Shown: positions 8,167 through 43,603 of the stretch, piece by piece
Layout: each line of letters starts with the position of its first letter
How positions within the stretch are numbered: the first letter of the stretch is position 1
NCBI GenBank assembly: GCA_964036045.1
Contig: OZ038379.1
Span: forward strand, 10,912,001-10,976,000
Direction of reading: 5' to 3'
DNA length: 64,000 nt
Source of the DNA: Eutreptiella sp. 'Long Island Sound 2002'
Taxonomy: Eukaryota; Protista; Euglenida
Notes under the pieces: generated by a model
Database searches by the model: none
Told to the model about the DNA's origin: nothing
What the model saw: only the letters and a program-made list of their open reading frames with translations
Made by a program: the position numbers and the translations under genes

Positions 8167-8171
<5 letters not shown>

Positions 8172-8889
8172 AACGAATGAAAAAGCAAGAAGAAAGTGGT
8201 CCTAAAGCATTGGGAACGCCGAGTGGCCACCAATTTTCTTCTGTTGTGTAGACTGGGATGTAGACAATGTTTGGATCCACGAAGTGCGTTCATGGTATCG
8301 CCAAACAAGTGCACACGGCAAGCTTCAAGGTAACCAACACCGCACGTAGTGTCGCGTCATTTGTTGTGTGACCTTCGTAGTCCTCTAGTCCTAGAAGCCA
8401 TCTTTTCACCTTCTCGAACCCGAATTCCGCGGCCACTTGGTTTGACGGGTTTTGGTTGCCATGCCGAACCGATCCAAAATGATCGTAACGTCGGGAATTT
8501 TGCAAGACAAGCTAGTTGCTCGTGTTCAACTCAAGAAAGCTCGGCCTTCGTCTTTTTCACTTGTCATGTGTAGATGATGCTTCGGATACTTCGCCGAAGC
8601 ATGGAGAACAATACCATTTGTGTTTTGCGGACATTCCAAATCGAGATCGGAGTACTAGGCGCTATTGGAAGCTTGTGGTCACCGAGTCTCCGCGAGTTGC
8701 ACATCAAAGGTGTTGATTGGTGGTGTGCAGAAGAAGTTGACCCAAGCATAGGGTCTAGGGGCGGGTGGAGGGGGGGGGGGGGGCGGGCAAAGGCTGGTTC
8801 AACCGAGCGGGTTTGCCGTTGCACCACCTCCACCCAAACCTAGCGTGAGCCACATGTTATCGCTATCCAAGAACAAGGGCTACACGCCC

Positions 8890-17784: not shown

Positions 17785-17878
17785 TGCTTTGAGATGACGC
17801 TGGATGAAGTCGAAGGCATCGGTATCCACCGCTTGGCAGTCATGGGGCAGCTTGTAGGGGTCCTGGAGCACGTCGACT
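17785..17878 (-). CDS. Possible isolated exon (DVLQDPYKLPHDCQAVDTDAFDFIQRHLK), product unknown
   Basis: Nearly all codons end in G/C and an upstream ACAG could be the acceptor. Boundaries are uncertain and no partner exon was found. Confidence 0.35.
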
Positions 17879-19626: not shown

Positions 19627-20793
19627 CAAAAACAAAATAGAAACAGCACCTATTTTTTCGGCAGTAAAACGGGTTACATGGCCGAGAAAAACGGGTTAAT
19701 AGCCCGTTTTCGTGCCGGTAAAACGGGTTACTTGCACGTTTTACATGTAAATAAACGAAATGAATAATATGTAATACATGAACATACATAATACATAATT
19801 TAAATAATGGAAAACAATGATTTTGTGAACTAACAAGCGTAGCGTCATGACACAAGAACTTTTGCGGAGTAGCTGCGGAGTAGCGGCACGAGCAGACAAT
19901 TGGGTTTACGGTGGGTGCAAAAGTATTGAAATGCCCTCCCTTTAGCATTTACAGCATGAGGGCAAACACCTACGTACTATGCAATTGAACTTTATGACAC
20001 TTGCTACTAACATCGGTGCTTGCACTCCATCATTTTGCGTTGATTCCAAAGCACAATATGCGGGTGAGACACATGCAGCCCATCCATGTCCTCAAAGCTT
20101 CATGATGCGTGACACTCGGATGGTTTATGTTCATCCTTGCTTCAAGAGACAAATACAAAACCTTAAGTTTAACCCTAGTGCATGCACGAAACAATACTAA
20201 ACAATGCTTGCCTCGGCTCACTGGCCTGTTCAGTTGCCACCGTAGTGGCCAGTATAACATCGTTGTGACCGACAGCGTTCGCCTCCCCGCAGGGGACCCG
20301 ACCAATACCCACACGTTCACGCACTCACTCACCCGCGTATTCTGTCATGTCCCGCCGACGAAAGCAAAGATACATTCAACATACAGTGCCCCGTCCCTGC
20401 CCATCATAGCTGGTCATGCGCGGATGTAACTCAATCGCGGCAGGGGGTGGGTGGGTGGGGTCAGAGCAGGCCACCCTCTCACCTTCAAACCCCCCCCCTG
20501 CGCCCACTACTGTCGCTCTTAAGCTGGACATCCCACCGCTCCCACTCCACAAAACAGCTATGAAGTGTGGCAGAAACCCGCCCCGATTAGTGGCAGGGGG
20601 TGGGGGGGGGGGGGACAAACTGACAAATGCCTAATGAAGAGGTAATTAAGTTAAACCAGTGTTTTGAGCAAGCTCAAAACACGAGTTTAACCCTAGTGCA
20701 TGCACGAAACAATACTAAACAATGCTTGCCTCGGCTCACTGGAAAGCTTTACCAGGCTGGCTTCTGACACCCGCGGCGCGACCCAGGTGGGCG

Positions 20794-23700: not shown

Positions 23701-24123
23701 GCACCAAGTCCGCCATTGTTTTCTCGAGCTGAGGAGCCCCTGCAGGAAAGAGCAAGTCGTCCCTGGCGCACCCTCGTCCCTCAGCCCAGTCGTGAAGCCA
23801 CTCAACAAACGGCCTGACCCAAGGAGGCACCGGCCTCCTCTGCCACCCTTCATGTCCTGTCTTACTATTCCAAAAAACCAAATAACTGCTGTCACGTACA
23901 TCCCCAACACGTACGCTAGCAGCCTCCGCCACTCTAAGAAAACAAACATATGACACCAGGGCCATTGCCACGACCGCCCTTTCGCCATCCGAAGTCGTTC
24001 TATCCACCAAATGACGCAGCAGTACAGGACTTGCATATTCTTGGACTCCCGCTTGGGCCCCCGCTTTAGCAAGCCGCCAATGCAGTGGTTTGACGACCCC
24101 TGCAGCCATTTGGAGGTCTTCAC
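20794..24123 (-). CDS. Reverse transcriptase/RNase H ORF of the YR element (true start uncertain; the 5' part overlaps the YR ORF)
   Basis: RT motifs HIDLSNAFW, RLPFGWAFSPYLCQ and HYLDDF. RNase H motifs LVDAAKD, QVAELMG, FADSMV and HPADPMSR. No stops. Confidence 0.93.
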   Translation of the reverse strand: MKTSKWLQGSSNHCIGGLLKRGPKRESKNMQVLYCCVIWWIERLRMAKGRSWQWPWCHMFVFLEWRRLLAYVLGMYVTAVIWFFGIVRQDMKGGRGGRCLLGSGRLLSGFTTGLRDEGAPGTTCSFLQGLLSSRKQWRTWCVGRHGPDIGGTVSDVEELQRAGREDRPCLILNGGADGQQRRRQWRMRLGTEMKRLWPRFVYHRFGVPYQRQLSRIRSKYGETSCSMSGIRTKTGRCGAGASDAEQRPVCSGVRDLQGNRDLMRQTWAVHRRTRDQEYRPMMGRVCVRVSGGLQRLFQRQRQEGVQEQDRRWGGQVSLSGDLRVLPVHSPAGDRMPAMQRVLGSKCPAMEERGQSSDSRRRRRDDQRRQRSRGHGGQPLSLPEGTEESSVRWVAEPFQYQQAGRVARRWRWRRLQRDARLPQGWRELHDDRGTAMESPDRDGSDPGLYPVEPAAPGGGLASNGDQPLGSPLRVPGILGGWVGTEAGLHLKGGILLTIMAVLTQHFWWLKCRLQCAVGVLVRRLWILLNRIISVCEDFRLDEPLGICLMAVQYLSPGVWDSVNHLSTSPKPREAKVTPEILEAGIGNVGCYAMSEAEWDAAVPPEFLEFMRTFDLREADRGNGRVRATVSGMTDAIRRTGVLHDESPSLPPTCFPFVIPKNDIKRSLILSCVGIHRGLHLKPPKFSLASWEGIGRWMAEQPAGVELYGTHIDLSNAFWSFLLPRKARRIFRFFTHQKGGLVSLDRLPFGWAFSPYLCQEILGRVVGDAVPDGVFLVHYLDDFILLSSDKPLLGTTTSHLKDRIVRAGFLVSAKSTLSPVQKLQALGKVVDLKERSIQVQPFVFLQFLVAWLRLATGAYSKRRLDKLLGTLQWHLGPRRGFSGVLAGAYAWSRFGPERAPATPVKVLEGLATAIARIGQKWRPLSESRMRRVRQLGGWCLSERPASRGDLFGAVILVDAAKDGVCYRVGGVLPANQSVRTWVCPDGPCNQQVAELMGIAWAVRLAVRLGWKVFTVFADSMVGIAQVRGLKAASHLRTQLRVLRALTWVLYNTGVIVRLIWVPSELHPADPMSRVDMDFGGRVHQAELEAWERWRVLQKYPELCWVQGLAYV

Positions 24124-24373
24124 AAGCCCGCACTACCGAGATGATGCCTCTCGCCCCACTTGAGCTGCCACCATTTTGAACGTGCTGAGCGAGTTTCCGA
24201 GATAGGATGGAAGGCAAGTTGCCCTCTTCTCCCAAGGATTCCTCAAGGTCTCCCAACCTTCGCAAACTGGACGCGTATCCAGCCGTCGTAGACGGCTTCC
24301 AACCCCGAATTGCAACACCCACAGGTGTTGTGGGTTCTTCCTCACGTCGGTGCGACTCAAACTCAAGCGCCAA
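22733..24373 (-). CDS. Tyrosine recombinase ORF of the YR element
   Basis: Catalytic set present: FLRVAEA (R), NSKTG (K), HCFRRGG (HxxR), GRW (W), AMAY (Y). Low-complexity C-terminal tail. Confidence 0.93.
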   Translation of the reverse strand: MALEFESHRREEEPTTPVGVAIRGWKPSTTAGYASSLRRLGDLEESLGEEGNLPSILSRKLAQHVQNGGSSSGARGIISVVRACEDLQMAAGVVKPLHWRLAKAGAQAGVQEYASPVLLRHLVDRTTSDGERAVVAMALVSYVCFLRVAEAASVRVGDVRDSSYLVFWNSKTGHEGWQRRPVPPWVRPFVEWLHDWAEGRGCARDDLLFPAGAPQLEKTMADLVRGTAWSRHRWHCFRRGGAAACWKRGPALPHFKWWGRWAATATAMAYALGYRDEEVVAPLCLPQVWGSVSAAAFADPQQVWGDIMFDERHQDKNRPVWGRSERRRAAPSMFRGKRFAGEPRSDAADLGSSSEDTGSGVSADDGPSVRSGVRRTAEVVPAPEARRSSRAGPTMGRPGVAERGLAGPAGPLPSGGSDASDAASAGQQVPGNGGERAKFRFTAPPPGRPKAPTKSGPWRSAAEPARGHRGVKRTVGGRALSVPAGRKGGAAVAVATPSTRRPVTTRVAGATRRPRHSDGESGPGRKRSRTLPSGAGSTRGGARQQR

Positions 24374-24451
24374 CCACCGGTACGTCGGCCTCTGCTCTCC
24401 CGGTGGTTCGATCCCCGCGACGGCATCCCGATACCGCCACGGGTTTTCTCG

Positions 24452-25376
24452 TCACGACCACAATGGGCACCGGAAACACCAGTACCGCAAGTTCTCCAGC
24501 TTTCCCGCCGCCGTGCATCTACGGCAATCTTCGCTGGGTTGTGCATCCACCGGTATCCAGTCTCCGGCCTTGGATAACCAGTAGGCTACCCCGTCCCGTT
24601 TCTTGAATTGAATACTCTTGTTTTGGGAAATTCAGTATGGTTTTCGGGACACTCTGCAGAGGGAGAAGGCGACCTACGGTCGGCAATGTTTGCAGTGGCA
24701 CCCAGTGGTGTAGGGAAAGGGCAAAGAGGGGTTGGGTTGGGTAAGGTGATACCCCACACATGAATTTTGCATGAAAAATGACAAATTTCCAACAAAGAAA
24801 AAACCAACGCGTACGTGTTGAGATTTCAACACGTACGCGTCTATGTGAACAGATCTTAGCAGTTATATATCTCCAGGAATCCCCGCCACTCGCCATGGCC
24901 TCATCAAAATTTTCCGACTTTCCTTTGGGCCCCGATGCTTGTCCCGGCGAATACCTCTTCACGTAAGTCGCATGTGCAACAATGAGGACTTTCCACATTC
25001 TGTACGCCAACGCATCTCCGAGACTTAATTGTTCTCCTTGCTTACCTCCCACGTCTGCTGGCCTACTCGGCTTCGGAACCGCCGTCACATACTTCTTTAA
25101 TACCGCACATGCATCCTTCATCCAAACCGTGACTCTTTCCTTCTTCAAAAACTCCTCTATCCCATCCAAGTTGAGGTCCGGGATTTCCGTGTCCTTGCGC
25201 TTTTCAATCTCCGTGGCGGCTAATTGTACCCTCAAGCGCTCCACCTCCGCATCCTGTCGACGGAGCATGGCCTTCAACTCGGCCAATTCCTTGGCCGTAC
25301 CCGATTCCGCGTGTGAATCGTCGGACACAAAAATTGCGTCCTCTTGCATCCCGCTGCTCCCGTGAAGCCCAGACAT
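24452..25376 (-). pseudogene. Gag-like ORF1 of the YR element, apparently frameshifted in this copy
   Basis: ATG at 25376 is followed by a coiled-coil (ELAELKAMLRRQDAEVERLRVQL). A zinc-knuckle-like end (GVAYWLSK...CRRC...RYWCFRCP*) lies in a different frame (24631-24452) from the ORF that stops at 24519. Confidence 0.6.
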
Positions 25377-26798
25377 GGCAAAAAGGGAACAAACTGACAA
25401 ATGCCTAATGAAGAGGTAATTAAGTTAAACCCGTGTTTTGAGCAAGCACAAAACACGAGGCTCCCAATTAGGAGGTGTGTTCAAATTCACCCGGATAGTA
25501 CATGGAAGGGTGAATTGTACAACACAATGCAAAGCAAGCGAGCAGCGCTCAAAAGCTCAAAGACATGGAACTCGATATAGACAGCAAAATGCGGTGCCCC
25601 ATGTGCTGCTGGTCTCAACACCAATAATCTGATGGGGGGCACGGTACAAAAGGGATTGAAAACAGGAAAATGGACGACCCTTGGACGTCTCAGTTTGAAT
25701 GGCATCGCATCTATACCATAAACAATTTGTCATTTGGGGCACGCCAACTCTTCGGCAATCGCGAAGTCTCCCGAGGCAGAAGGAATACCTTCTCGAGCCT
25801 TCCGTAGGATGGGATCAAATTTTACCCGCGCCCGCAAGGGTCGGCCAAAACCAAAACCAAACAAAACCAAAATTTGGTGCCACGCACAGGTTAGCAGCTG
25901 CTACAAGCGGAAAAGTAAGGATGCGGGCTTCAATGGGGGAGAGCTGATGAAAATGTTCTCAAATAAAATGCATCCGGGCTGCACCCGTGACAAGTGGTAA
26001 AAGAGCCTTCTCCGTTCTCAAATTGTGCAATGCCAGTAAGGGAAACCACTTCAAGTGATAGCGACATCCACACAATGCAAGCCAATCCACCCTCCACCAT
26101 TGAGTGCAAAAGTCCAAGATATCGCACTTTTGATGCCAATTCAAACGAAAGCGGATGGTTCGCCGCTGCTGTGCATAGCGCATGACGTCGTGCCTGCAAA
26201 ATCGTTCAAAAACCCAGTTCAGCCGCAAACGGTGGTCACTAGTGAAAAAATATGAACACGACTCTCCAATACGGCCATGTGGTTGGTCGGCATGGCAAAT
26301 CCCTGCTCTAGCACTCCCCGGGAACCTAGTGACTTGGGAGGAAGAAGCGACTCGGCGAAACTTTTGCGTCCTCTTGGTACGGCCATGGGGACATACGGAG
26401 AGAATGGGCCCAATTGTGGTTGTAGCTCACGTGTTCCCTTTGCAAGATTTTGTCCTTCATGCAAAACGGAAAATCTTTGAATCTTTGAATTGATAAAAAA
26501 AAAGCATAACCATGGATTGTCTCATTGAAATGATACATTTAGACGATGTAATGGGATAGCACTGTCGAAACAATCAACATCATTCACTTTTCTTTTTTTT
26601 GGGCCCCTAGTCTGCATTCTGAAATTGCCAAATTTCTGCAATAGATAGAAATCAGAATCAGGAATGTGATCCTAGAAAATCCGGTTCCAACATTGTGTCA
26701 ATTCCTGAATGTCCTGTCAGGTACTGAGGAGAAAAGATGACGCGGCTCAGTAAGGGACTTATCCCTTACTTAGCCGCATCCCACAAATGTGTCAGAAG

Positions 26799-28539: not shown

Positions 28540-29856
28540 TCAATTCAAAGATTCAAAGATTTTCCGTTTTGCATGAAGGACAAAATCTTGCAAAGGGAAC
28601 ACGTGAGCTACCACCACAATTGGGCCCATTCCCTCCCAAGTCACTAGGTTCCCGGGAGTGCCAGAGCAGGGATTTGCCATGCCGACCAACCACATGGCCG
28701 TATTGGAGAGTCGTGTTCATGTTTTTTCGCTAGTGACCACCGTTTGCGGCTGAACTGGGGTTTTGAACGATTTTGCAGGCACGACGTCATGCGCTATGCA
28801 CAGCAGCGGCGAACCATCCGCTTTCGTTTGAATTGGCATCAAAAGTGCGATATCTTGGACTTTTTGCACTCAATGGTGGAGGGTGGATTGGCTTGCATCG
28901 TGTGGATGTCGCTATCACTTGAAGTGGTTTCCCTTACTGGCATTGCACAATTTGAGAACGGAGAAGGCTCTTTTACCACTTGTCACGGGTGCAGCCCGGA
29001 TGCATTTTATTTGAGAACATTTTCATCAGCTCTCCCCCATTGAAGCCCGCATCCTTACTTTTCCGCTTGTAGCAGCTGCTAACCTGTGCGTGGCACCAAA
29101 TTTTGGTTTTGTTTGGTTTTGGTTTTGGCCGACCCTTGCGGGCGCGGGTAAAATTTTGATCCCATCCTACGGAAGGCTCGAGAAGGTATTCCTTCTGCCT
29201 CGGGAGACTTCGCGATTGCCGAAGAGTTGGCGTGCCCCAAATGACAAATTGTTTATGGTATAGATGCGATGCCATTCAAACTGAGACGTCCAAGGGTCGT
29301 CCATTTTCCTGTTTTCAATCCCTTTTGTACCGTGCCCCCCATCAGATTATTGGTGTTGAGACCAGCAGCACATGGGGCACCGCATTTTGCTGTCTATATC
29401 GAGTTCCATGTCTTTGAGCTTTTGAGCGCTGCTCGCTTGCTTTGCATTGTGTTGTACAATTCACCCTTCCATGTACTATCCGGGTGAATTTGAACACACC
29501 TCCTAATTGGGAGCCTTAAGGTTTTGTATTTGTCTCTTGAAGCAAGGATGAACATAAACCATCTGAGTGTCACGCATCGTGAAGCTTTGAGGATATGGAT
29601 GGGCTGCATGTGTCTCACCCGCATATTGTGCTTTGGAATCAACGCAAAATGATGGAGTGCAAGCACCGATGTTAGTAGCAAGTGTCATAAAGTTCAATTG
29701 CATAGTACGTAGGTGTTTGCCCTCATGCTGTAAATGCTAAAGGGAGGGCATTTCAATACTTTTGCACCCACCGTAAACCCAATTGTCTGCTCGTGCCGCT
29801 ACTCCGCAGCTACTCCGCAAAAGTTCTTGTGTCATGACGCTACGCTTGTTAGTTCA
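28540..29856. repeat. Right arm of the inverted duplication; carries the empty YR target site at ~29514
   Basis: The reverse complement of ~29505-29530 reads AAAACCTTAAG|GCTCCCAA, joining the two flanks of the YR element. Confidence 0.92.
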
Positions 29857-30149: not shown

Positions 30150-31460
30150 ACATGGGACTTGTGGAGATGCCTAGAGCTGCGCTTGGGGGAGCCTTGCAGG
30201 CGAAGCGAGACTCGGGGGAGTTGCCTTACCTTTTTATGGCCGGAGCTGCGCTTGGGGGAGCCGTGCAGGCGAAGCGAATTTTGGGGGATCCGCCGTACCT
30301 TTTTATGCCCCGAGCTACGCTTGGGGAAGCAGGCAAAGCGAGACTCGGGGGAGCTGGGAGCTCGGGGGATTCCCATTCTGTATTTGATTGCTGGTGACGA
30401 GATACACGTGTTGGCCCGGACCATTTCCAAGTACGGGTTGTCTGTTTTCAACGATCACTCCGACGTGCCTACCGACGTGGTGGCTTGCCACCAGACGGAT
30501 TCCTTCAACGTTCAAGAGGTCCGAGACGTGGCTAGCTCTCATCGCTCAGAGTGCCTCGACGAGGTCGCGAACTCTCACTTAGACGGCTTCGTACGAGACG
30601 GCTTCGTACGTCATACGTCAACTATTTCTGACGAGGACATGCTTCCATTCGTGCCTCGCGAATCCTTGCAGGTGAAGATTGTTTCGCGCACATTGTTTGT
30701 GTCGTTGCGTCGGACGGATGCTTGGAGGATGCTCTTTTTTTATGTGCACTGCACATTTGTGTACAGTTCCAAGTCGTTCTCAATATTCCGTTCAACACTC
30801 AAGGAGTCGCGTTTGGCCACCAGATGCCCTCGTGCTCTGTGTTGAAGCCACCAAAGACCCTGATTGGGAAAAAGACACAGCGAGGAAAGAGCTTGCTCCC
30901 CAAAGCAGAAGCACGAATTTGTGTCGTTACCTTTTTTGTGTTGCTTTGTGTTCAAACAGTGGAGAGTTCAACACAGTTCAAATGCATCCTTTTTTTGTTT
31001 GCATCCAGTATGTAGCTCCAAGGGGTCCGAATCCAGCAATGCACACAAAACACCAGCTCTACCAAGTGCCAGAGAAGTCCACAATGTTGTTTTTGTCTTC
31101 AGAGTGCCGCCACAAGGTCGTGAATTCGTCTCTGCAGTTCTTCGACGGCTTTCGCACATCGTACGTCGACTATTCCTGACGAGGACGTGCTTCCACTCGT
31201 TCCTTGCAGGTGAAGCTTGTTTCGCGCACGTTGTTTGTGTCGTTGCGTCGGACGGATGCTTGGAGGATGCTCTTTTTTTATGTGCACTGCACATTTGTGT
31301 ACAGTTCCAAGTCGTTCTCAATATTCCGTTCAACACTCAAGGAGTCGCGTTTGGCCACCAGATGCCCTCGTGCTCTGTGTTGAAGCCACCAAAGACCCTG
31401 ATTGGGAAAAAGACACAGCGAGGAAAGAGCTTGCTCCCCAAAGCAGAAGCACGAATTTGC
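30150..31460. repeat. Local repeats: ~3 copies of a ~75-bp unit (30170-30370) and a ~300-bp direct duplication (~30620-30920 and ~31170-31460)
   Basis: GAGCTGCGCTTGGGGGAGCC..GCAGGCGAAGCGA recurs. GGACGGATGCTTGGAGGATGCTC...GCAGAAGCACGAATTTG occurs twice. Confidence 0.85.
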
Positions 31461-32876
31461 TCTTTTTTTGGTTACTTTCATGAAAACCTGTCCAGCTTGC
31501 AATGCAAAAGACTCCACAGTTGCAATGTGTGGTAGGATAGATGCCCAATTTTTTTGGGGGGGGCGGGGCTGCTATAACATGGGCATGACCTTGAACCACA
31601 TGGGCGGTCTTTCTTTGGGCTATGTCAACATAGTGTTGTTGGTGGTGGCCAGCCGTTAGGTCAATTCCGCCGCAAGCCTGCCCGCCAGCTGTTGGAGTTA
31701 ATAGTTGCTGGCCCTTTTTTTATGCAGGCGTAATTTCTTTGTGTGGTCTGTTGTTTGTTGAGTTTGGGTATTTGTGGCGGTTTGTAGGTGTCCTAGAATA
31801 AGTTGCATGCTTACCACCTTTTGTGCTTTCTTGTTTTGTGTTGTCTTTTTTTTGTGTTGGTATTGTGTTGTTTGAGTGTTGTGTGTGTTTGACTTGCCAA
31901 TTGGACAAGGCAGTGGCCTTGTTGCTACCTTGTGTGACTCATTTGGCCATTATTTATCCTCTTGCTCGTGTGTGTATGTGGTAGATGGAGTGTAGATGCA
32001 TCATTGCAAAGCCTATGTAGACAATGCTTGAATGCTCAATCACACACATGCCGCACATTTTGTGTTAGCCATCCACCCACTTGGGCCAAAAGGTGCCAGG
32101 CACTTGAGAATAGGTACAGTGCATGAGCGTCATCACATTGAGGTTTGTGCTTTGACACCAAACTGTGCATGGGAAATTTGGGCACAATGTTGGAATCTGG
32201 GATTGTTGGTATGCAAACTTGAGCGAAGTTTGCAAAATGGAAGTGCTTGCACCTAGGACATCATTGTTGACCACGGACACAACAATTGGGGGAGACGCAA
32301 CACACAGAGCATGCAATATCAGTGGCTATGTAAATGTTGAGTCTAGATATGAGCACCACCTTATTACATAGGACAATGGCCCAAAGGAGACTAAGGTGTT
32401 GTCAAGCCGGGGCCCGAAAAATAATGAAATTTTCGACAGCTGTTTTTCGGGCAAGGGGGGGGTTCAGCTATCGGCACAGGATTCTACCCTTGCCATTGTG
32501 ATCCTGAAGGGCTTGGCTGTTTTGAGCCACAAGAGTGGAATAATCGAAATTTCTGAAACAGATTTGCCATGCATGGTGGTGCAAGTTGCTTGTGCATCAT
32601 CTTTCTCTTCTTTTTATGTTATTTTCACCAAATTCGTCCCTGGATGCTGGGGACAGCGCAGACGTGTGCTGCGCGAAGTGCAAAAGCATGACCTGTGTCT
32701 ACGCGTTGCAATAACACCTATCCGCAACCTCTTTACCAGCAGCCATCGTAAAAAATGCGTTTTCATTGCACTATACGAAGCTGTAGAGAGGACACGAAAG
32801 TACCACATCTTTGAGTTGCATGCCCATGTCAGATGATGGAATCGTTCCAACAGCCTCCGTCCCAATGTCCTGGCAG

Positions 32877-33078
32877 GTAACCCACTTGGTCTGTGGTGAG
32901 AAAGGGCACACCACCCAAGCTTACGACAAAGCAGTGCACAACAACATTCTGATCGTCACGGAGGCTTTCGTGGCTCATCTGCTGGACCACGGCACAGTGC
33001 CCAGCAGCAGCATGATCTCAGAGTTCGCGTGGGCCCCACCTGAATGGTATCAGTGCGCGATGTGCATGTTCGGCCTAG
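32877..33078 (+). CDS. Exon encoding the C-terminal half of BRCT-like domain 1
   Basis: CAG| acceptor, then VTHLVCGEKGHTTQAYDKAVHNNILIVTEAFVAHLL (BRCT THLv...A...iVt..f pattern). Donor CTA G|GTGCGG at 33078 is phase 1 and fits the next exon. An alternative donor lies at 33046. Confidence 0.68.
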
Positions 33079-34563
33079 GTGCGGGTAGGCTTGCATGTAT
33101 GCGCTTGTGCGTGCACTTTGGCGCATGAATATAGCTCCAATGGTCCGCGTTGGGGCACCTTTGGAGAGTCATTTGGGCAGGGTATGTCCAGCGATTGGGA
33201 TGGGGTTAGGGACACGCTGGACAGGGTCCAGATTGCAAAAAGTGGGGGTGGTGGCGGTCAGAGTACGTGCCGTCAAATTCGGATTCCGAGCCATACAGCC
33301 AAAGATATCGTCCACCGTGGCGAAATAGGTCGCCTCACGCTCTGCGGAGCCGTGTTGAAAGTTGGAACTTGTGGCTAGTCGCTGAACAAGGTTGGTTTTT
33401 TCATCTGCGACTTGCCCTCTGAAGTGGGCGGAACCCCAAGTGAGATCAAGCAAAAGGAGAAGCACAAGTGTCCAAGTCCATCGCTGGGAGTTGTGCATGT
33501 GAGGACCTCAAGGCACTTGACAAAAGAAAAACGCCTGCCACAGGCATATGCCACAAAACTACGGCGGAAGTTTTGGCACCAAAGTCCCAAATGTGCAGCA
33601 TTCAAGCACAAATTAGCAGATTCGCCTTTGTTGGATGCAACAACTGCAAACACAAGGAGCCTTCGAGGCACCATCGGACAAGTTGGGCGGCCTGTGACAC
33701 GTGGGGCAGTTATTGAGGCGTGACCCAGAGTTGTCTTGGAGGTAGAGGCTGGAACAACCCTCAATGGCGCAGCAAGGGAAGTGAAACTGTGGCACACTCA
33801 CCGCTAAATCTGCGCTGTGGCCGGTTTGGGGCACACTTGACTGGACGGACGTCGCCGAACTGGACGGTTTCCACAGGGTGTTTTCCCAATTTGGAGCCCA
33901 CAGCGATTGTTCAGGTCAGGGCAGGTTACGGCAGGGCAGGGCACATGTGGTTGCATAAGGGGACAGGAGTAGAGTTGAGCCCACAGCGTTGGGATGGGGT
34001 GATTGACACAGCTGCCAGTGGACTTGCTTGTTGCTTGCTTGCTTCGTTGCTGTAGTGAAGGACAGAGGGCTGTTGTAATGCAGACTGTAATATCTGACGG
34101 GATATTTGGTGGCTCAATGACCCATCGTTCCCGAATTCCTGTGCCCCTTTCCCCTCCTCTCCCCCCTCAGAAGACTCAGTGGCCCGGAACCTCCTGGCCC
34201 GGTGCTACATTTGCCACATCAGTGGTAGTGGCGAGCCCCCTCTATATCTTCACAGTCTTGGGAGGGCCTTCATGAACAGGTTGCCATCGCCAGCATGGCA
34301 GGGATGCCACAGGGGCAGAAGCACCCCTTGTGATCACATGGACAACTGACACACTCTCACCCACCAATACGCCCAGAAGTACTCACCAGCACATTTACTG
34401 AGCCTTTTTGGCAATTTCCCACACACACACAATTATGCACCACACTTTTCCTCTAGTTCCTGTGGTTTAGCCCCATTACTTGGTGAGCAATCCCAGAGCA
34501 ACGAATCTCCGGTCATGGTATTTCTCTCAAAACCAATGGCCATCTTGACTGTGTCTTATTCAG

Positions 34564-34622
34564 GATATGGCTTCATCTTTGCTGGGCATCCAAAGCAGAA
34601 GACCCGCAAGGAGTGGATCGAG
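34564..34622 (+). CDS. Exon encoding the N-terminal part of BRCT-like domain 2 (GYGFIFAGHPKQKTRKEWIE)
   Basis: TCTTATTCAG| acceptor, GAG|GTATGC donor, phase 1 to 0. Confidence 0.72.
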
Positions 34623-36404
34623 GTATGCACCATCAGCAGTTGAGGCTGTACCACGTTGCAGAAATTGCAATGTGGAGTGCAGAAAATGTGGTTGACATGT
34701 GCTGCAGAAAATGCAAGGCGTGTTGTGGAAATGGTACACAATCGAACGAAAGTGTAGCGTGTGTTGCAGAAAGGTCAATGCATGTCGAAGAAAATGTAGT
34801 GTGTGTTGTAGAAGATGTAATCTGCATTGTAGCCAATTGAATGCGCATTGTAGAGAATGTAACATTTTTGCATGAAATTTGATATGCCGTGTGGAAAATA
34901 TATCGCGCGTTGGAGAACGCTTTACTACGTATTGTGGAAATTATAGTGTGTGTCATGTCATTTTGTAGAAAACGAAATATGCAGTGTAGGCAATACTGTG
35001 CATTGTAGAACACAGAAATACGCGTTGTAGAAACGGGAGGGGGTAATCCACAAAACGGGTTGTCAATTTTTCGGCCGAATTGCTTAAGATTATTGTCACT
35101 GGGGGGGGGGGGGGGGCTGAAATCTCCAAAAAAAAGGGATATTCGAAGAGGTATCCGTCATGGGGGGTCCTGAGGCCATATTTTTGAGTACCGAAGACGC
35201 AATTTTGAACTTTTCATGGTTTCGACCTGCTGTTGGCTCAGCTCCCGGCGTCTCGACCTTGCTCCCCCCCCCCCCCCCCCCAAATCCTCCGACATATTGT
35301 CAGTGAGTGGTCAAGTCATTGAGGGTGGATTGGTTGCATTTTAATGTTTAGAAGCCATGTGCAAAGTAGCTCCCCTCATCCCAATGATATGTTGGCTAAT
35401 CTGAACACTAACACCCCTGTGCAGCCTGATGCGAACTGGCAGCACCATGGGGGGTGCCCATGATGGTTGTGCCAAGTATTGTTGAGTTGAGTCGAGCCAC
35501 TTTGCACATGGCTTCTACACATCAGACGCAACAAATCTACTCTGAATGAATATGACCTCCCATTGACACTATTTTGAAGGAATCGGGCCTGTAAGATGCC
35601 CGGGATGCAGCCTTGCCAGATGTTGGTGAAAACATGGCAAAAATGATACAAAATCGGAATCTCTGGGCAGAGGATTTACGGACAGGCCCCAAAATCTTCA
35701 AAAATGGATTCCCCACCCCTCTATTTTCAAAATAGAGGGGATTCACCCTGGGACTCCTCAAACATGGGCATGCCATACGTACATGGCAAAACCGACTGAA
35801 CATGGGACCAACACAGCCCCATCATTTCTGGAAAAATCCGTTGTTGACCCCATTTTTAACGCACTTATGGGCGCCAAATGGCCCGTTTTCAAAGGGTTTC
35901 GGGACTGTTCGGGGGCCACACAGGGCAGGACGGCCTCAAAACAGGCTGAAAACACTCGTTTTGGGCATCCCAAGAGGTCTGGGAGCAATTTTGGAAGACG
36001 TCATTCTACAAACCCTGATTGCTGGGTTGTTTATGTCGCATTGTGTTCAGATGGAGCAAGTGTATTGGTTGGTCCGTTGTGCCCCATGACATTGCAGCCC
36101 TTCGTTTTGCTGCTGGAGGAGATTTGGACATTCTGTCTGATTTCTGTAGAGCCATGGTTGTTGGGATTTTGAATGTTGCTGCTGGCCCTGCAGCAGTCAC
36201 CCTTGTTGCCCAGTTGTGGGACCCTGTGGCTCTTCTAACGTGGAAGGGTTTGCTTGCCTCATTGTCACATCAGCAGCGATGAAGACTTTGAGTGACACCA
36301 AGATTGAAAGTGCCCGAAAACGGATTGGAAAGTGTATGGCACTCCTCGAGTTCAACCAACCTATGTGTGTGGCATGGACTGCGTGCGATCCCATAGTCCA
36401 AGGG

Positions 36405-37582
36405 CCCGCACTTCTTGTTATGAACAGGAGAAGGGCACCCAAACATCCTTCACAGGAAGGTTAACTTCACAAAAATGCCGCCAAGGAAAAACAGGAAAAT
36501 TGAAGTATCTTGCGACGCCAGGACCATTGCAGAAATTCAGTTGGCAAAAAAAACAAACAACGGCAGATAAATGAACACGGTCTTCTGTTTTCTGGCGGCC
36601 TTCAAAAATTGCGAAAATAGAATTCAACAGAATTGGTATCCCGCGTATTCTCTGACACCGCTACAGTCTATCTGGATGAGACACTGGATCGGGCCGGTGT
36701 CGAATATCTTGGTCTGTTGCAGCATCAGCTGCTGCTGTGTTGAAAGGGTGTTTTACCTTGCTGTGAATGGTCCTCCACCTTATCGTCATTTCACCCAAAC
36801 TTGAAAGGGGTTGAATTACGCAGTCTGGCGTTTCTGTTGGTTGCAATCTACGCCGTGTCTACCGGCCTCCATGGCGGGGATATCCAGTTGACCGCAGGAG
36901 GTTAGGTTTGCTGCACTTGTGCCCATTGAACCGTTTCCTCTATTATACAGGAACTGGGGAGTCGTGGCTGGTCTGTGGCCCGGACGCTGACCTCCGAGGT
37001 GACGCATTTGGTGGTGTGCGAGAACGGGGCTGGCACCGCTTTGCACAATGCAGCCCACAGAAAAGCTGAGGTTGCGGTTGTTACAGAGGATTTCCTGGTC
37101 CACCTTGTGGAGACTGGGGAGGAGTTGCAGTCCACATTTGTGGCGGCCGAGGACAGTGGTATGGGGATGATTGGGTCGGGCAGGTCCGGAGGGGATGTCT
37201 GCCGCGAGGGAATTTCTCACTGGCAGGGGTTCGTTGGGTCACGGTTTCTCCCGTGTGGGCCGAGGGGTGGTGGGGCTGGACAAATGTTGGTTGCCACGGG
37301 GATTTATTTCTTTTCTTCTTTCTTTCGTTTTTCCAGGAAAGCCTCAGGTTTTGGGGTGGCATTTTTGTGGCAACCCGACAGTGGTTGGCGACGCAGTAAC
37401 CCGCACTTCTTGTTATGAACAGGAGAAGGGCACCCAAACATCCTTCACAGAAAGGTCAACTTCACAAAAATGCTGCCCAGGAAAAACAGGAAAAATGAAG
37501 TATCTTGCGACGCCAGGACCATTGCAGAAATTCAGTTGGCAAAACAAACAAACAACGGCAGATAAATGAACACGGTCTTCTG
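36405..37582. repeat. Pair of 183-bp direct repeats (36405-36587, 37400-37582) flanking the BRCT exon
   Basis: CCCGCACTTCTTGTTATGAACAGG...GAACACGGTCTTCTG occurs twice with a few mismatches. Confidence 0.92.
36951..37158 (+). CDS. Exon completing BRCT-like domain 2
   Basis: TTTCCTCTATTATACAG| acceptor, then ELGSRGWSVARTLTSEVTHLVVCENG...AVVTEDFLVHLVETG. Donor G|GTATGG, phase 0 to 1. Confidence 0.8.
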
Positions 37583-38895
37583 GATTGCATCGGGTCAGCT
37601 TCCACTTATGAGTGTTCATCGGGAGGAGTCCTGCACACTGTTGGTGACGCACAAATCTCCCTCATCAGCCGGTGCTCTGCCTCAGGGCGCATCGAACGTC
37701 CTTGGGGTGCAACGGAATCAAAAACGTGACATTTTCCGACTAGAAAAATTTTGAGTTTGTTTCCAAGCACCGTTTATTGCACCTGATTTTTTTTTTTTTA
37801 CTGTATTTGCAAATGTGCTTGAAAGAATCACAGCCATTGAAAACACCATCACCCCCTTGTTTGCCGGTCTGGTTACAACATGGGCTAGGTGGTCGTTTGA
37901 CTCCTTCCCACGATGGGGACTCCATATGGTAGTGGATGGTGGTGGTTAGGCGGTCATTTGATTCCTCCCCTCTTTGGGCACCCTGATACGGTATGGGTTG
38001 TGCAGCCATTTGACTCCTTCCCGGCTTGAGGACCCTGATGCTGCATGCTGCTTTGGGCAGGTTAATGCATGAGTTATGTAGTCATTTGATTCCTCACCGC
38101 TTGGGGACCCTGGTAAAAATCTGTGAAGGAGAATTTCTCCCCTTAACTCACACCACGTGTTCAAGGCGTGCCACCTGCCACTCCAAAGCGCCAAATGTTG
38201 GATATCTCTCAAGTGACTCCATTGCCCAGGAAAACTTGACACAACACAACCCCACGCCACAACCCCCGCTTTAAGTTAGTGGCCTGGGTGTGACATCACC
38301 GGTTCTTTGCACTGCGGGTATGGTCAAACACATGGGATTGGTGTTTGCAGTTCAAGGCATGTGTTGAAACATGCGATGCTGGTGTGTCTCCGCGCCTTGC
38401 ACGTTTGAGAAAAAAAAGCTTGCTCTGTGGCCTGCTTCTTTTTTTTTCTTGTGGGGTGGCCGTTGAACCCGCCTGTCATTTGTACTTGTGGGACCCCAAG
38501 CGCAATCAGCTGTACAAGCAAGCTCTTGTGGATGGCCCAAGCAACAAAGGCATTCCAGCACCGACCCCTTCACATTCCAATGTGGGGACAGTTGCAGTTG
38601 CGACTGTCATCGATGTGTGTGGATTTGGGCGTGTTGTCACCCAACCATATGTCACTCAGCTTTGTGAAGCATGATCGGGACATTGTGAATTGCACCCCTG
38701 GGGTGCAATCGGCGTTTGTTTGAGTCCTCTGACCGTCCATCTTGTTTCTCTCTTCCCCCGCCACATATCATGTCCCCAATTCATGTGTGACCTTTTTTCT
38801 TGGTATTTGTAGGTGCGATATCCAAATCCTACTGAGGGCCCCTTCCCCTGCATTGTTCAATCCTGCACAACGAAGTCTGTGACCCGCTTCCCCAG

Positions 38896-39034
38896 AGGAC
38901 GTGGCACAGATGCCGCAGGCCCCTGAGTTTCTTTTGGCCAAGACGCTGCAGCGGCTGGACGAGGCGGCGGCGCTGAAGGGCTGGTGGGTGTCCGAGAAGT
39001 ACGACGGGCTGCGGGCGTATTGGGATGGCGAGCG
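38896..39034 (+). CDS. Exon encoding the start of an ATP-dependent DNA ligase adenylation domain (compact LigE/kinetoplastid-ligase-k type)
   Basis: CTTCCCCAG| acceptor in phase 1 fits the BRCT exon. FLLAK...GWWVSEKYDGLRAYWDG carries motif I KxDGxR. The donor is at 39034 or 39038. Confidence 0.85.
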
Positions 39035-40360
39035 GTTGGTGTGGCCTGTGCTCCGTTTCTCCGGACCGCTACCCCCTGCCCCCAAGCCCCACCCCATTCC
39101 CCGTTGGGTCTGGGCCGCGGGCCGTGCCCGGTGTGGCGGATGGGGGCCCTTTCTGAAGGGGCCGGGCAGGCCGACTGGTGCAGCGGAGTGGCGGGGGAGG
39201 AGGGGGCCGAAGGGAGGCTTTGGGAGCGGTTGCAGGCGGTTGGAAAGCGGTTGGGAGGCAATTTCGGTCGGGTACAAAGCGGTGTCAGGGCCGTTGAAGG
39301 GGGCCAGAAGCGGTTAGCACAGCTGACCGGCACCCCAAAGAGGGGCGGGGGCAGGGATCCCTCCCCCCTCTTCAAGCGCACCCCCGTGGATGTATTAGAA
39401 CAGCTGCCAACCGTAGGTGGAGGGTCCCCCGCCCCTTGGGCCCCCTCCCCCCACCTCCTCCCCTTCTCATGCGTTGGGGGGGGATTGCACTCTTCGCTAC
39501 AGGTTCCCCCACCTATCTAATGTTTAGCAATAATCATTACTTTGCCCCTGGTGTCAGGGGAGACACAGGCTTCGGCTGCAATTTGCTTTTCATAATTTGT
39601 GCCCAGCTGCTTGTGCTGGGCCTCCGCAGTGTTCGTGTTTGTATTGCTGATCAGTGACAGACCTGGACGGAGTTTTGGGGGGGGGTGTCAAGCGCTACCA
39701 ACTAACACTTCAATGGTCAGTCACACGCCAACAAACCCTCGAGACTCCCCCCCTGCTCTCGACCCCTTCCCCGAACCTCCGTTAAACAACCAGCCACAGT
39801 CAAGGGAACAGACAACAGTCAGCCAAACACAGGGGGTCACTGACAGCACCAATTGGAAATGTTACGGTTTCGTTTTGGGCCCTCTCAGTTGGTTGTTCAA
39901 CAGGTCCTGTGTGATGCATGGGTGCCTGGGCAGGCCGGTTTCACTTCTGCCCGCAACGGGGGGAGGAGAGGACGCCCAGGCACTCAAGGAGGCCAAGAGA
40001 GCAGGTTGGGATGGACAACCGTAGGAGGCAGGGGGGCTTGGGCCAGACCCAGGGCTGCTCGGCACTCGGTACCACTGGGGGTGGGGTCCCCCCCCCCCCA
40101 CCTAGATCTACCCACCAATCCCCCCCGAAAATATTGGACCATATTTTCCTCTGGGCCTTCGGCCAATCAAAAAACTTTCTCTGGTGCCTTTGGCGCCAAT
40201 TGACTGGAGTGGGAATTGGCCAAAGTCCCTCCGTGTGTTTGGCGGTCCCTCGTTGCATATGGGAGAATTATTTCAAGGAAATTACGGATTTCAGAGCCAA
40301 AACCAAAGCTATGACCCATGTGCACCGCCACCACCTTTGCCTGCTCGCTGCTCTTTGCAG

Positions 40361-40505
40361 GAATTTACTCCTGGCCAGCCGTTGTTTATTTTCGAGAACC
40401 TCTCGCTGGGTGAGAAAGCCAAGACGCCCTTAGTTGTTGGTATCAACGGCGATGTGACCCATACGTCCTTTCCTTTTGACGAGACATTCAATACCGTCCC
40501 GGAAG
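40361..40505 (+). pseudogene. PNO: PFO/PNO exon, duplicate copy 1
   Basis: CTCTTTGCAG| EFTPG...VGINGDVTHTSFPFDETFNTVPEG |GTGTG matches the PFO EFTPG...vGI.DDVT.TSL segment. Confidence 0.78.
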
Positions 40506-41029
40506 GTGTGTTGAATGACGCAGCGCCGAGCACGCTGCTGGTAGCATTGATGCCATGAGGGCCTCAGAGCAATTACCGCCTGCTTTCCAAACAACTACGA
40601 CCAGCTTTAAAATCTTTGGGGCTTCCGCAGGATTTCCATGAACAGACGTGCTTAGGTACACCAGCTCCACCAAGTGCAAGAGTGCAGACCTATTCCGTAA
40701 AGAGGGAAATTTTAGGAGAGAGCATGGCATGCCAACAGCTCAAATAGAGGCAAATCTGGAGACGCCAAGAGCCAGAATCAGCACCTCTCCCACTCTCATT
40801 TCATAAAACATTTTTCCCACTGACCACAACAAGCAACAGAGTCAATTTATTTCTCAAACTCAAACCAGAGTGCACCAGTTTCACGCCACTTACTGTTGTT
40901 TTTTGAAATGTGATGAGCAACGTACGCATAAAGAGGGCGTTTTTTTTTTGTAGGGTTGAACACAGTGCATTGCTCGTGGTAGATTCTCTGTGAGGTGGAC
41001 TTGCCAAAGGCAGTAGAATGTTTTTAAAG

Positions 41030-41220: not shown

Positions 41221-41806
41221 TCGGTTGCTCTCTACACAGAGTGGTTTTCCCTTGACGGACCGTTCACTATTGGCTGTCTTGGGTCTGTTGGAGCATCCTT
41301 GAATAGCTATGATGAGACCAACGCTTAGAGCAACACCTTTCATGGATGTGCGGAGACGTGTTATGCAGACCCCTCCTGCACAGCAATTCAGTTTGGCACA
41401 GCAGGCAAACCTCGCGAAAATGATTGCATCACCAGGAGCGCATTTTACTACGATTCGAATGCGAATTGGGGTTCTTATCAACTCATCAGAAGTATGTTCA
41501 TCATTGGCTCATTTGTCACATTGCCTGTCTGAAGCATGCTCTCCTCCACCACACTGCAGCACAACAAACACCGAATTCCGAACAGGCTGCCACATAACAC
41601 CCATCCCCAAATGTTGTTCAATTTGTGTAGCTATCTTGTTAAGTCTGTTGAACTAGTTGACTCGGAGTTAGAAATGCGGTGCGTGATCGACGGTCGATGG
41701 TCATATTCGACGGAGTGTGTGCACGTAGCCCGAAAAACAGTGCAATGCGAAAACCTCGGGGTGTGCACACAGGCGGCCACCTTTGCCTGCTCGCTGCTCT
41801 TTGCAG

Positions 41807-41951
41807 GAATTTACTCCTGGCCAGCCGTTGTTTATTTTCCAGAACCTCTCGCTGGGTGAGAAAGCCAAGACGCCCTTAGTTGTTGGTATCAACGGCGATG
41901 CGACCCATACGTCCTTTCCTTTTGACGAGACATTCAATACCGTCCCGGAAG
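41807..41951 (+). pseudogene. PNO: PFO/PNO exon, copy 2
   Basis: Same 145-nt exon with intact splice sites. Its phase 1 end joins the exon at 42314. Confidence 0.8.
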
Positions 41952-42195
41952 GTGTGTTGAATGACGCTGTGGCCCAGTGCCGAGCATGCTGCTGGTAGCA
42001 TTGATGCCATGAGGGCCTCAGAGCCCGAGAGGGGGATGCAATCACAGCCTGCTTGCCAGCCAACTACCGCCCGCTTTAAAATCTGCGGGGTTTCCGCAGG
42101 ATTCCATGAACAAACGTGCTTAGGTACTGCTGGTGGAATGTTTCTGATGGGTGCGTTCATCAACAATGATTTCTTTTCGGCGTTCAGAGGCCTGA

Positions 42196-42569
<374 letters not shown>

Positions 42570-42957
42570 TGTCTCTGGCCATTTGTGCACAGAAAAGCAT
42601 TTCTGTGTTTCTCACCCAGTTTGAACCCTTTGGGTGGGAGCATGTGTTACACTTTCCATGTGCATACTGTGTAGCATATTGGATGCTGAATATATGGACG
42701 TTGAGCGCTTGCTTTTGGGCAAGCAAAGCATTTGGTTTTGGCCCATTCCTCCCCATTTCCACAATGCTATTGAAGGGGAGATGCCTTGCTTATCATTTTT
42801 GTATTGGGTGTTCCATATAGGACAGCGACACACAAGCTGAATTTGCACATGTTAGGTTTTTCTCTCAAGGTCGCTTAATGGCACATCTTGGTGTGCACAA
42901 CATGCAGTGCATTAGAAACTGGGCTTCACAGGGGACTTGGTGTAAGGTCTGACATAC

Positions 42958-43323
42958 ACCATGGATTGCTTGGAAGCTGTGGGCAAGGACACGTGATCCC
43001 CATAAGTCGCGCAGTAAGCAGGCTGAGGGGCACGTCCATGCACCAAGGATTGCTTGGAGGCTGTGGGCAAGGACACGTGATCCCCATAAGTCGCGCAGTA
43101 AGCAGGCTGAGGGGCACGTCCATGCACCAAGGATTGCTTGGAGGCTGTGGGCAAGGACACGTGATCCCCATAAGTCGCGCAGTAAGCAGGCTGAGGGGCA
43201 CGTCCATGCACCAAGGATTGCTTGGAGGCTGTGGGCAAGGACACGTGATCCCCATAAGTCGCGCAGTAAGCAGGCTGAGGGGCACGTCCATGCACCATGG
43301 ATTGTTTGGAGGCTGTGGGCAAG
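42958..43323. repeat. 84-bp tandem minisatellite, ~4.3 near-identical copies
   Basis: GGATTG units start at 42963, 43047, 43131, 43215 and 43299. No unique spacers. Confidence 0.95.
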
Positions 43324-43603
43324 GTGCCGGCTCATGCGCTCTGCCTTTGCGTGTCCCCGCTGGCACGCCCGGCAAACTCGACGCGTCTGCCAAACTAAGT
43401 ACCAGTTTTTTTTTTGCACGTTTTTGGAGCTGTACTGCCGATGGTGTCAGCAGCAGCCCCGCCAGGACCTTTTGCTTAGGCCTGGTTTGGTTTCCAGCCC
43501 TCGGGCTGATGTTGGCCTCTGCTTCCATACCTAACCTCATACCATCATGAATCTGTAGCAACCTCTCTTGTTAGCTCTTGTTAGCTCTGCCAAGCCACAC
43601 AAC

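What the first reader, a model, noticed from the sequence alone, without database searches (positions are those of the whole stretch)
32877..39038. Tandem BRCT domains spliced in front of a compact bacterial-type ATP-dependent DNA ligase
Seen in sequence: four GT-AG exons (32877-33078, 34564-34622, 36951-37158, 38896-~39034) join in phase to give BRCT1 (part), BRCT2, a linker and LLAK...WWVSEKYDGLRAYWDG. Established knowledge: the SEKxDGxRAYWDG form of motif I is typical of minimal ligases (bacterial LigE, phage-like, kinetoplastid ligase k). BRCT domains in LigIII, LigIV and LigA are C-terminal. Inference: an N-terminal BRCT pair on a minimal ligase would be an unusual repair enzyme, perhaps an acquired ligase given a eukaryotic recruitment module. 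I could not find exons for ligase motifs III-VI or for the first half of BRCT1 in this window.
Basis: partly seen in the sequence, partly recalled or inferred. Interest (0 to 1): 0.75.

Follow-up and report, generated by a model that had tools for sequence, protein, structure and literature searches.

The report
Dead partial copy of BRCT-ligase gene
The BRCT and ligase exons are real, but here they are a broken, truncated, many-times-copied duplicate of a complete BRCT-BRCT-ligase gene found elsewhere in the same assembly, transcribed together with fragments of an unrelated enzyme gene, so this locus makes no ligase.

Summary
The four exons exist, and their identities hold: BRCT, and the linker plus motif I of a LigE-type ATP-dependent ligase. 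Two spliced transcript contigs (L002, L003) map to this window at 99-100%. They confirm E2, E3, the E1 acceptor and the E4 donor. They use a different E1 donor (33046, not 33078) and a different E4 acceptor (38813, not 38896). As spliced, the three parts lie in separate short frames closed by stops. E4 joins PFOR (pyruvate:ferredoxin oxidoreductase) fragments, not further ligase exons.

No exon for ligase motifs III-VI or the OB domain occurs anywhere in the 64 kb. A complete gene with every motif lies at another locus of the same assembly (L005). The window is collinear with it only over 31482-40202, plus 8075-9075.

The window copy carries four disabling changes, listed under Best explanation. 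It sits on contigs labelled 258x and 508x, against 34-35x for the complete gene. This scan's first readers noted six similar loci elsewhere in this genome.

N-terminal BRCT plus LigE-like ligase is widespread in protists and oomycetes, so the architecture is not unusual.

Verdict: a transcribed, amplified, non-processed pseudogene. Low interest.

The parts
8574..8709 (+). It is disabled by a 4-nt deletion near 8627-8630 and a TAG at 8656-8658.
   Evidence: Window 8310-9075 aligns to L005 865-1617 at 89.6%. The base-level alignment shows the deletion and the CAA-to-TAG change; coordinates come. The L005 counterpart matches BRCT profile positions 8-42 and family HMM positions 112-155.
30205..30671 (+). 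Transcribed exon, with its 5' end cut by the end of the contig, holding a decayed PFOR domain I fragment.
   Evidence: L002 1-467 maps here at 99.8%. Weak POR_N hit, E 0.011.
31103..31209 (+). Transcribed exon with the PFOR-like motif FFDGFRTS, followed by an in-frame stop. It is spliced to E1.
   Evidence: Junction 31209|GT...AG|32877 in L002. Translation. Reading the motif as PFOR rests on my own knowledge of the family.
31482..40202 (+). Block collinear with the 5' half of the complete BRCT-BRCT-ligase gene (L005 1920-11311). Homology ends at 40202, inside the intron after the motif I exon.
   Evidence: blastn at 92-95% identity. Exon divergence 2.25% against intron divergence 4.62%.
32877..33046 (+). 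E1, the C-terminal half of BRCT1. The real donor is at 33046, and a 2-nt deletion at 33044/33045 shifts the frame relative to E2.
   Evidence: L002 junction sequence. Alignment to L005, where the same donor keeps the frame. BRCT hits and HMM.
34564..34622 (+). E2, the N-terminal strand and helix of BRCT2.
   Evidence: Exact GT-AG junctions in L002 and L003. hhalign of the E2+E3 reading.
36951..37158 (+). E3, the rest of BRCT2.
   Evidence: Exact junctions in L002 and L003. HMM E 1.2e-5. hhalign 93%.
38813..39038 (+). E4 as actually spliced. The first 83 nt, relic intron sequence plus a 15-nt filler, put a TGA seven codons after E3. The ligase linker and motif I (lysine codon at 38997) lie in another frame.
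   Evidence: Junctions 37158|38813 and 39038|40361. Translations. PDB, HMM and hhalign matches. About 890 nt present in L005 and L004 are missing between 38868 and 38884.
40361..40505 (+). Transcribed exon carrying the end of PFOR domain II (VGINGDVTHTS). It follows E4 in the transcripts.
   Evidence: Product P0043. 99% direct repeat with 41777-41967.
41240..41491 (+). Transcribed exon with a weak PAN/Apple-like reading. It contains the stop that ends the 120-residue motif I reading frame.
   Evidence: PAN hits at E 0.05-0.15 only.
41807..41951 (+). Duplicate of the PFOR domain II exon, spliced in frame to the next PFOR exon.
42314..42563 (+). PFOR domain III exon, with a frameshift and stop near 42490.
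   Evidence: PF01558 E 3e-5. Sequence and frames.

Best explanation
This locus is a non-processed pseudogene: a duplicate that keeps its introns.

**Origin (inferred).** A segment holding the 5' half of a BRCT-BRCT-LigE-type DNA ligase gene was duplicated. The segment runs from the BRCT1 exons through the motif I exon to about 1.2 kb into the next intron. The copy ended up interleaved, in the same orientation, with exons of a decayed PFOR gene. The composite then multiplied to many near-identical copies.

**What happens now (shown).** The locus is still transcribed, and its old GT-AG splice sites still work. The RNA is a train of relic exons: PFOR domain I pieces, BRCT1 C-half, BRCT2, ligase motif I, PFOR domain II end, a PAN-like exon, PFOR domain II end again, and PFOR domain III.

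**Why no ligase is made (shown from sequence).**
- The copy ends before motifs III, IIIa, IV, V and VI.
- A 2-nt deletion in E1 puts BRCT1 and BRCT2 out of frame.
- The upstream BRCT1 exon has a 4-nt deletion and a TAG.
- About 890 nt of the 3' part of intron 3 are deleted, including the pyrimidine tract of the original acceptor. Splicing has moved to an AG 83 nt upstream, which brings in a stop between BRCT2 and motif I.

**The working enzyme (inferred).** It is most likely encoded by the complete single-coverage gene at L005. That the deletion caused the acceptor shift, and that L005 is expressed, are also inferences.
For: - **Transcripts.** L002 (1757 nt) and L003 (1308 nt) come from two JGI samples. 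They map to the window at 99-100% as ten blocks, and eight of the nine junctions have an exact GT-AG solution. Their three-frame translations show BRCT1-C, BRCT2 and motif I in separate frames closed by stops. The motif I frame gives the 120-residue product P0043, which runs into PFOR sequence and then stops.
- **No other ligase exon in the window.** A 33-sequence family HMM run against all six frames of the window, with filters off, finds only E4, E3 and E1. Nothing matches positions 261-482. A motif regex finds only motif I.
- **Complete gene elsewhere.** L005 has in-frame GT-AG exons for all parts. They include LDGELW, EGLMLR, LLKLK, and an OB_2 exon with PRFPVF (Pfam E 1.8e-24).
- **Extent of the copy.** The window is collinear with L005 only over 31482-40202 and 8075-9075.
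- **Lesions.** They are seen in base-level alignments.
- **Copy number.** The window-type sequence is 99.9% identical to contigs named 508x and 258x. L001, L004 and L005 are named 34-35x. Six similar loci were noted elsewhere in this genome.
- **Other copies.** L001 and L004 are rearranged by inversions, and L004 is also hit by a retroelement.
- **Divergence from the parent.** Exons differ by 2.25% and introns by 4.62%, with 8 nonsynonymous and 5 synonymous changes. This fits constraint on only one of the two lineages.
Against: - Even that isoform would still end in PFOR exons.
- The copy number rests on my reading of the contig names as coverage, and on unchecked first-reader notes.
- No transcript of the complete gene at L005 was found, so its expression is inferred.
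- I take L002 and L003 to derive from RNA because they lack introns and their product is absent from the genome assembly. No sample description confirms this.
- Near-identity among many transcribed copies could in principle reflect a retained function.
Confidence: 0.88

Rival explanations
1. One reading: this locus is a working gene for a tandem-BRCT minimal ligase, and its remaining exons lie beyond the window or behind long or non-conventional introns.
For: The four exons can be joined in phase on paper. The domain order equals that of real proteins such as P0039. Introns in this genome are long: the complete gene at L005 spans more than 17 kb.
Against: Transcripts splice E4 to PFOR exons at 40361, not to ligase exons. 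Homology to the complete gene stops at 40202. No ligase exon is found in the 25 kb downstream on either strand. There is a frameshift in E1, a stop after E3 and a disabled BRCT1 exon.
Confidence: 0.03
2. The chimeric transcript has gained a new role. It could act as a regulatory non-coding RNA, or encode a short product such as the 120-residue motif I/PFOR reading or a BRCT2-only peptide. That would explain why many near-identical copies are kept and expressed.
For: The locus is transcribed and accurately spliced in two samples. Copies are 99.9% identical.
Against: Every recognisable module is truncated or out of frame. The BRCT2 frame has no ATG. P0043 matches no Pfam family. Near-identity is explained more simply by recent amplification. 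Other copies are scrambled by inversions.
Confidence: 0.07
3. Assembly artefact: the juxtaposition of ligase and PFOR pieces is a mis-join in the assembly.
For: The region is a high-copy repeat, which is where assemblers err.
Against: The same arrangement occurs at 99.9-100% identity in two ENA contigs, a JGI contig of 5.2 kb and a Logan contig. Spliced transcripts cross the ligase/PFOR boundaries on both sides.
Confidence: 0.02

Closest known systems
Eukaryotic BRCT-(BRCT)-LigE-type DNA ligases (PF00533 + PF01068 + PF14743), e.g. P0039, P0013 and the Phytophthora 'DNA ligase' proteins P0080, P0091, P0159
   Same: The domain order is the same (one or two N-terminal BRCT domains, a linker, then a minimal ligase), and so is the PPxVLLAK...GWWVSEKxDGxRAxWDG signature. 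The complete gene at L005 has every part.
   Different: The window copy keeps only the BRCT parts and motif I, and it is frameshifted and truncated. It is a relic of a family member, not a member in working order.
Bacterial Lig E (solved structures 4d05, 6gdr, 8u6x)
   Same: The motif I context SEKxDGxRAYWDG is shared. The OB_2-type OB domain is present in the parent gene.
   Different: As described in PMC7470946, Lig E is a two-domain periplasmic enzyme with a signal peptide and no BRCT. The euglenid parent has BRCT domains and introns.
Eukaryotic ligase E of bdelloid rotifers and Mortierella (AvLigE, MvLigE), and kinetoplastid ligase K (PMC10665377)
   Same: The catalytic core is the same (PF01068 + PF14743) in eukaryotes, with an added module for recruitment to DNA damage.
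   Different: The added module described there is a PBZ zinc finger, not BRCT, and 'BRCT' does not occur in that paper's main text. I did not test how the euglenid gene relates to ligase K.
Non-processed (duplicated) transcribed pseudogenes and chimeric gene-fragment loci in segmental duplications
   Same: It retains introns, covers only part of the gene, carries frameshifts and stops, is still transcribed and spliced, and is multi-copy.
   Different: Relic exons of two unrelated genes (ligase and PFOR) are interleaved in one transcript. Contig labels suggest the unit is amplified about 7- to 15-fold per collapsed contig.

Membership tests
LigE-type ATP-dependent DNA ligase (working enzyme) | Motif I with the adenylated lysine (KxDG) | tested here: met
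   The reading SEKYDGLRAYWDG has its lysine codon at 38997.
LigE-type ATP-dependent DNA ligase (working enzyme) | Motifs III, IIIa, IV and V of the nucleotidyltransferase domain | tested here: not met
   No match to family HMM positions 261-411 in any frame of the 64-kb window. The regex finds none in context. Transcripts continue into PFOR exons. All are present in the parent locus L005.
LigE-type ATP-dependent DNA ligase (working enzyme) | OB_2-type OB domain with motif VI (PF14743) | tested here: not met
   Absent from the window. Present at L005 18256-18471 (Pfam E 1.8e-24).
BRCT domain | Match to the BRCT profile over the whole domain | tested here: inconclusive
   Pfam PF00533 gives 17.9 bits for E2+E3 and 19.0 bits for E1, both under the 21.3-bit cut-off. 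hhalign against the BRCT-ligase family gives 93% probability, E 3e-7, over 75 columns for E2+E3. BRCT1 is split, and its N-terminal half is disabled.
   In L002 and L003 the BRCT1-C, BRCT2 and motif I readings lie in different frames, each closed by stops. The junctions used are 33046|34564 and 37158|38813.
Non-processed duplicated pseudogene | Introns retained and collinear with a complete paralogue, partial extent, disabling lesions | tested here: met
   Collinear with L005 at 92-95%, introns included, over 31482-40202. Lesions are shown. The parent's exons are all open and in phase.
Non-processed duplicated pseudogene | Relaxed constraint on the copy | tested here: inconclusive
   8 nonsynonymous and 5 synonymous differences from the parent, with exons 2.25% and introns 4.62% diverged. 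There are too few sites, and no outgroup, to assign the changes to a lineage.

The most novel reading that the evidence does not exclude
The amplified ligase/PFOR relic transcript may be kept for a function, for example as a regulatory RNA or as the source of a small BRCT-like or motif I peptide that interferes with the real ligase. Separately, the complete euglenid BRCT-BRCT-LigE gene at L005 might be the free-living-euglenozoan counterpart of kinetoplastid ligase K, which would bear on where that mitochondrial ligase came from.
Probability: 0.07. Interest if true: 0.5.

Novelty: new member of a known kind. Interest (0 to 1): 0.2.

Why it matters
The main value is for annotation. This exon train recurs at several places in this genome and was flagged repeatedly as an unusual fusion enzyme, so knowing that the high-copy version is a dead, truncated duplicate prevents repeated false leads.

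It also shows that picking GT-AG sites to keep an exon chain in phase can mend a pseudogene on paper.

The useful positive result is that this euglenid has a complete BRCT-BRCT-LigE-type ligase gene at L005. That gene belongs to a family that is widespread in protists. In the papers I could search, the eukaryotic ligase E work describes a PBZ zinc-finger add-on rather than BRCT. The L005 gene, not this locus, is the one to study.

Tried and rejected
- **Read mapping.** Transcript evidence comes from assembled JGI contigs instead.
- **Joined model.** I used exon-by-exon references and natural transcript contigs. The joined-model search was left out.
- **Metagenome scans.** Two exact-pattern scans of metagenome contigs found nothing. 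One used a parent-specific exon and one used the shared motif I exon. That collection evidently lacks these samples.
- **Parent transcript.** A search for a transcript-derived protein of the complete gene, using the OB exon reading frame, gave only homologues at 50-61% identity. None of the proteins listed in the P0039 search matched E4 at more than 59% identity.
- **Atlas.** The protein Atlas look-up of E4 returned only short unnamed clusters.
- **Literature.** Searches for Euglena plus BRCT plus DNA ligase, and for an N-terminal BRCT on an ATP-dependent ligase, found nothing relevant.
- **Rejected reading.** Positions 33047-33078 are intron in the transcripts, and the frame there results from the 2-nt deletion.
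Full report
**1. What the sequence shows**

E4 reads EDVAQMPQAPEFLLAKTLQRLDEAAALKGWWVSEKYDGLRAYWDGERL.
- It matches motif I of three solved Lig E structures: 8u6x, 6gdr and 4d05 (E 5e-4 to 0.02).
- It matches the linker plus motif I of a profile of BRCT-ligase proteins (HMM E 1.6e-13; hhalign 98.8%, E 1.3e-16).

E1 and E3 score just below Pfam's BRCT threshold. The E2+E3 reading, taken from a natural transcript contig, aligns to the BRCT of the same family over 75 columns (hhalign 93%, E 3e-7).

**2. The architecture is not rare**

A full-library search with E4 returned P0039 (450 aa) and P0013 (362 aa).
- Pfam gives BRCT x2 + DNA_ligase_A_M + DNA_ligase_OB_2 for P0039.
- It gives BRCT + the same ligase core for P0013.

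A search with P0039 listed about 30 full-length proteins with this layout. They include Phytophthora proteins named 'DNA ligase'. Sister layouts carry SWIM, WGR or zinc-finger modules instead of BRCT.

Eukaryotic ligase E is described in the literature (PMC10665377), there with PBZ fingers. That paper's main text does not mention BRCT.

**3. Transcripts**

The read-through frame over E4 is in the protein collection as P0046, with paralogues P0001, P0047 and P0048.

A further protein, P0043 (120 aa), starts in E4 and then continues in sequence that is not the downstream intron. Its two source contigs are L002 (1757 nt) and L003 (1308 nt), from two JGI samples. They map to this window at 99-100% as a chain of blocks.

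Eight of the nine junctions have an exact GT-AG solution. I placed the first junction and the E1-E2 junction by direct alignment, and both are GT-AG there. I take the contigs to derive from RNA, because they lack introns and P0043 is absent from the genome assembly.

The exon chain in window coordinates is:

| Exon | Coordinates | Content |
|---|---|---|
| E(-2) | 30205-30671 | decayed PFOR domain I fragment |
| E(-1) | 31103-31209 | PFOR-like FFDGFRTS motif, then a stop |
| E1 | 32877-33046 | BRCT1 C-terminal half |
| E2 | 34564-34622 | start of BRCT2 |
| E3 | 36951-37158 | rest of BRCT2 |
| E4 | 38813-39038 | 83 nt of relic intron and filler, then ligase linker and motif I |
| E5 | 40361-40505 | end of PFOR domain II |
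| E6 | 41240-41491 | PAN-like |
| E7 | 41807-41951 | duplicate of E5 |
| E8 | 42314-42563+ | PFOR domain III |

The E1 donor is 33046, not 33078. The E4 acceptor is 38813, not 38896.

Translating the contigs shows the following.
- BRCT1-C, BRCT2 and motif I lie in frames 2, 3 and 2 of L002.
- The BRCT2 frame has no ATG and ends at a TGA seven codons into E4.
- The motif I frame begins after a stop, runs into a PFOR exon, and stops in E6.

**4. No more ligase in the window**

I built an HMM from 33 family members and ran it, with filters off, against every stop-to-stop reading of 12 or more residues in all six frames. It finds only E4, E3 and E1. Nothing matches model positions 261-482, which cover motifs III to VI. 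A regex for the motifs gives only motif I in context.

**5. The complete gene**

The paralogue P0048 lies on contig ctg10798_35x of ENA assembly ERZ25074135. In the 20-kb locus L005 a called product carries PF14743.

The family HMM finds eight collinear exons on one strand:

| Part | L005 position |
|---|---|
| BRCT1 N-half | 1138-1269 |
| E1 equivalent | about 3710-3878 |
| E3 equivalent | 7163-7370 |
| E4 equivalent | 9987-10129 |
| Motif III (LDGELW) | 12730-12834 |
| Motif IIIa | 15708-15872 |
| Motifs IV and V (EGLMLR, LLKLK) | 16573-16731 |
| OB with motif VI (PRFPVF) | 18256-18471 |

The short E2 equivalent, at about L005 5847-5905, is a ninth exon, seen in the base alignment rather than by the HMM.

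In-frame GT-AG junctions exist for every step. The OB exon scores E 1.8e-24 against PF14743.

The window's own sequence occurs in the same assembly (L006, 99.95% over 20.4 kb). The two loci are therefore paralogues in one assembly.

**6. How the window copy differs**

The window is collinear with L005 only over 31482-40202 and 8075-9075, at 87-95% identity. The 3' half of the gene is absent. The lesions are:
- **Exon A (8574-8709):** a 4-nt deletion and a CAA-to-TAG change.
- **E1:** two bases are missing just before the donor. In L005 that same donor leaves phase 1 and reads ...APPES|GYGFIFAG in frame. In the window the phase is 2, so E2 is out of frame.
- **Intron 3:** about 890 nt present in L005 and L004 (about 440 nt of it also in L001) are replaced by 15 nt between 38868 and 38884. 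This removes the pyrimidine-rich tract in front of the original acceptor. The transcripts use an AG 83 nt upstream instead. That the deletion caused this shift is my inference.

That is why the chain looked intact on paper.

Against L005, exons differ by 2.25% and introns by 4.62%, with 8 nonsynonymous and 5 synonymous changes. This is what one expects if only the L005 lineage is constrained. The numbers are small.

**7. The company the ligase exons keep**

The flanking transcript exons are PFOR relics in the correct order. The PFOR motif assignments other than the Pfam hits rest on my own knowledge of the family.
- A POR_N-like piece (E 0.011).
- FFDGFRTS followed by a stop.
- The end of domain II, twice, through a 1446-bp local duplication.
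- Domain III (PF01558, E 3e-5), with a frameshift near 42490.

The locus is thus a mosaic of two dead genes read into one RNA.

**8. Copy number and other copies**

The window-type sequence lies on contigs named ctg7603_508x and ctg7343_258x. L001, L004 and L005 are on contigs named 34x-35x. Read as coverage, which is my inference, that means roughly 7-15 collapsed copies per contig.

L006 and L007 are 99.9% identical to the window. This scan's first readers noted six further BRCT-plus-ligase exon trains in the same genome. One lies 20.7 kb beyond this window. Another was described as a train of BRCT, ligase, PFOR, PAN and PFOR exons. Those notes are unchecked.

L001 and L004 are older copies, 92-96% identical to the window. 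In them the ligase exon is flanked by inverted PFOR or BRCT segments, and L004 also holds a retroelement.

**9. Limits**

- No transcript of the complete gene was found.
- The organism is called a euglenid alga in earlier follow-up notes of this scan. I did not verify that.

**10. Verdict**

This locus is a transcribed, amplified, non-processed pseudogene fragment. Its interest is low. The complete gene at L005 is a new member of a known but little-studied family.

Noticed in passing
L005 (ENA ERZ25074135, ctg10798_35x_l, 943390-963671, reversed), about 1138-18471 +: An apparently complete BRCT-BRCT-LigE-type ligase gene with all catalytic motifs and in-phase GT-AG exons. It is the likely parent of the window copy.
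   Followed up: yes
window 28913-49315: 99.9% identical to contigs labelled 508x and 258x in the ENA assembly. This suggests a recently amplified large repeat unit that carries the whole relic locus.
   Followed up: partly
window 42953-43372: An 84-bp tandem repeat with open frames in two phases. Its length differs between the two high-coverage contigs L006 and L007.
   Followed up: no
window 40331-40659 and 41777-42127: A local duplication (core 99% identical, 1446 bp apart) that doubles a PFOR exon. Both copies are used as exons in the transcripts.
   Followed up: partly
window 30546-30921 and 31099-31459; 30167-30304: A 90-99% direct repeat 538 bp apart, and a 69-bp tandem pair, inside the upstream transcript exons and intron.
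   Followed up: no
window 19826-20167 / 29515-29856 and 25458-26341 / 28632-29516: The two flanks of the element at 20168-25459 recur, inverted and adjoining each other, about 3-4 kb downstream at 99% identity.
   Followed up: no
L004 12456-17791: A retroelement-like pair of frames (394 aa with a faint zf-CCHC hit, then 1282 aa) inserted next to a rearranged copy of the ligase exon.
   Followed up: no
window 41240-41491: A Cys-rich reading with weak PAN/Apple resemblance (E 0.05-0.15), used as an exon between the two PFOR exon copies. Its origin is unknown.
   Followed up: partly
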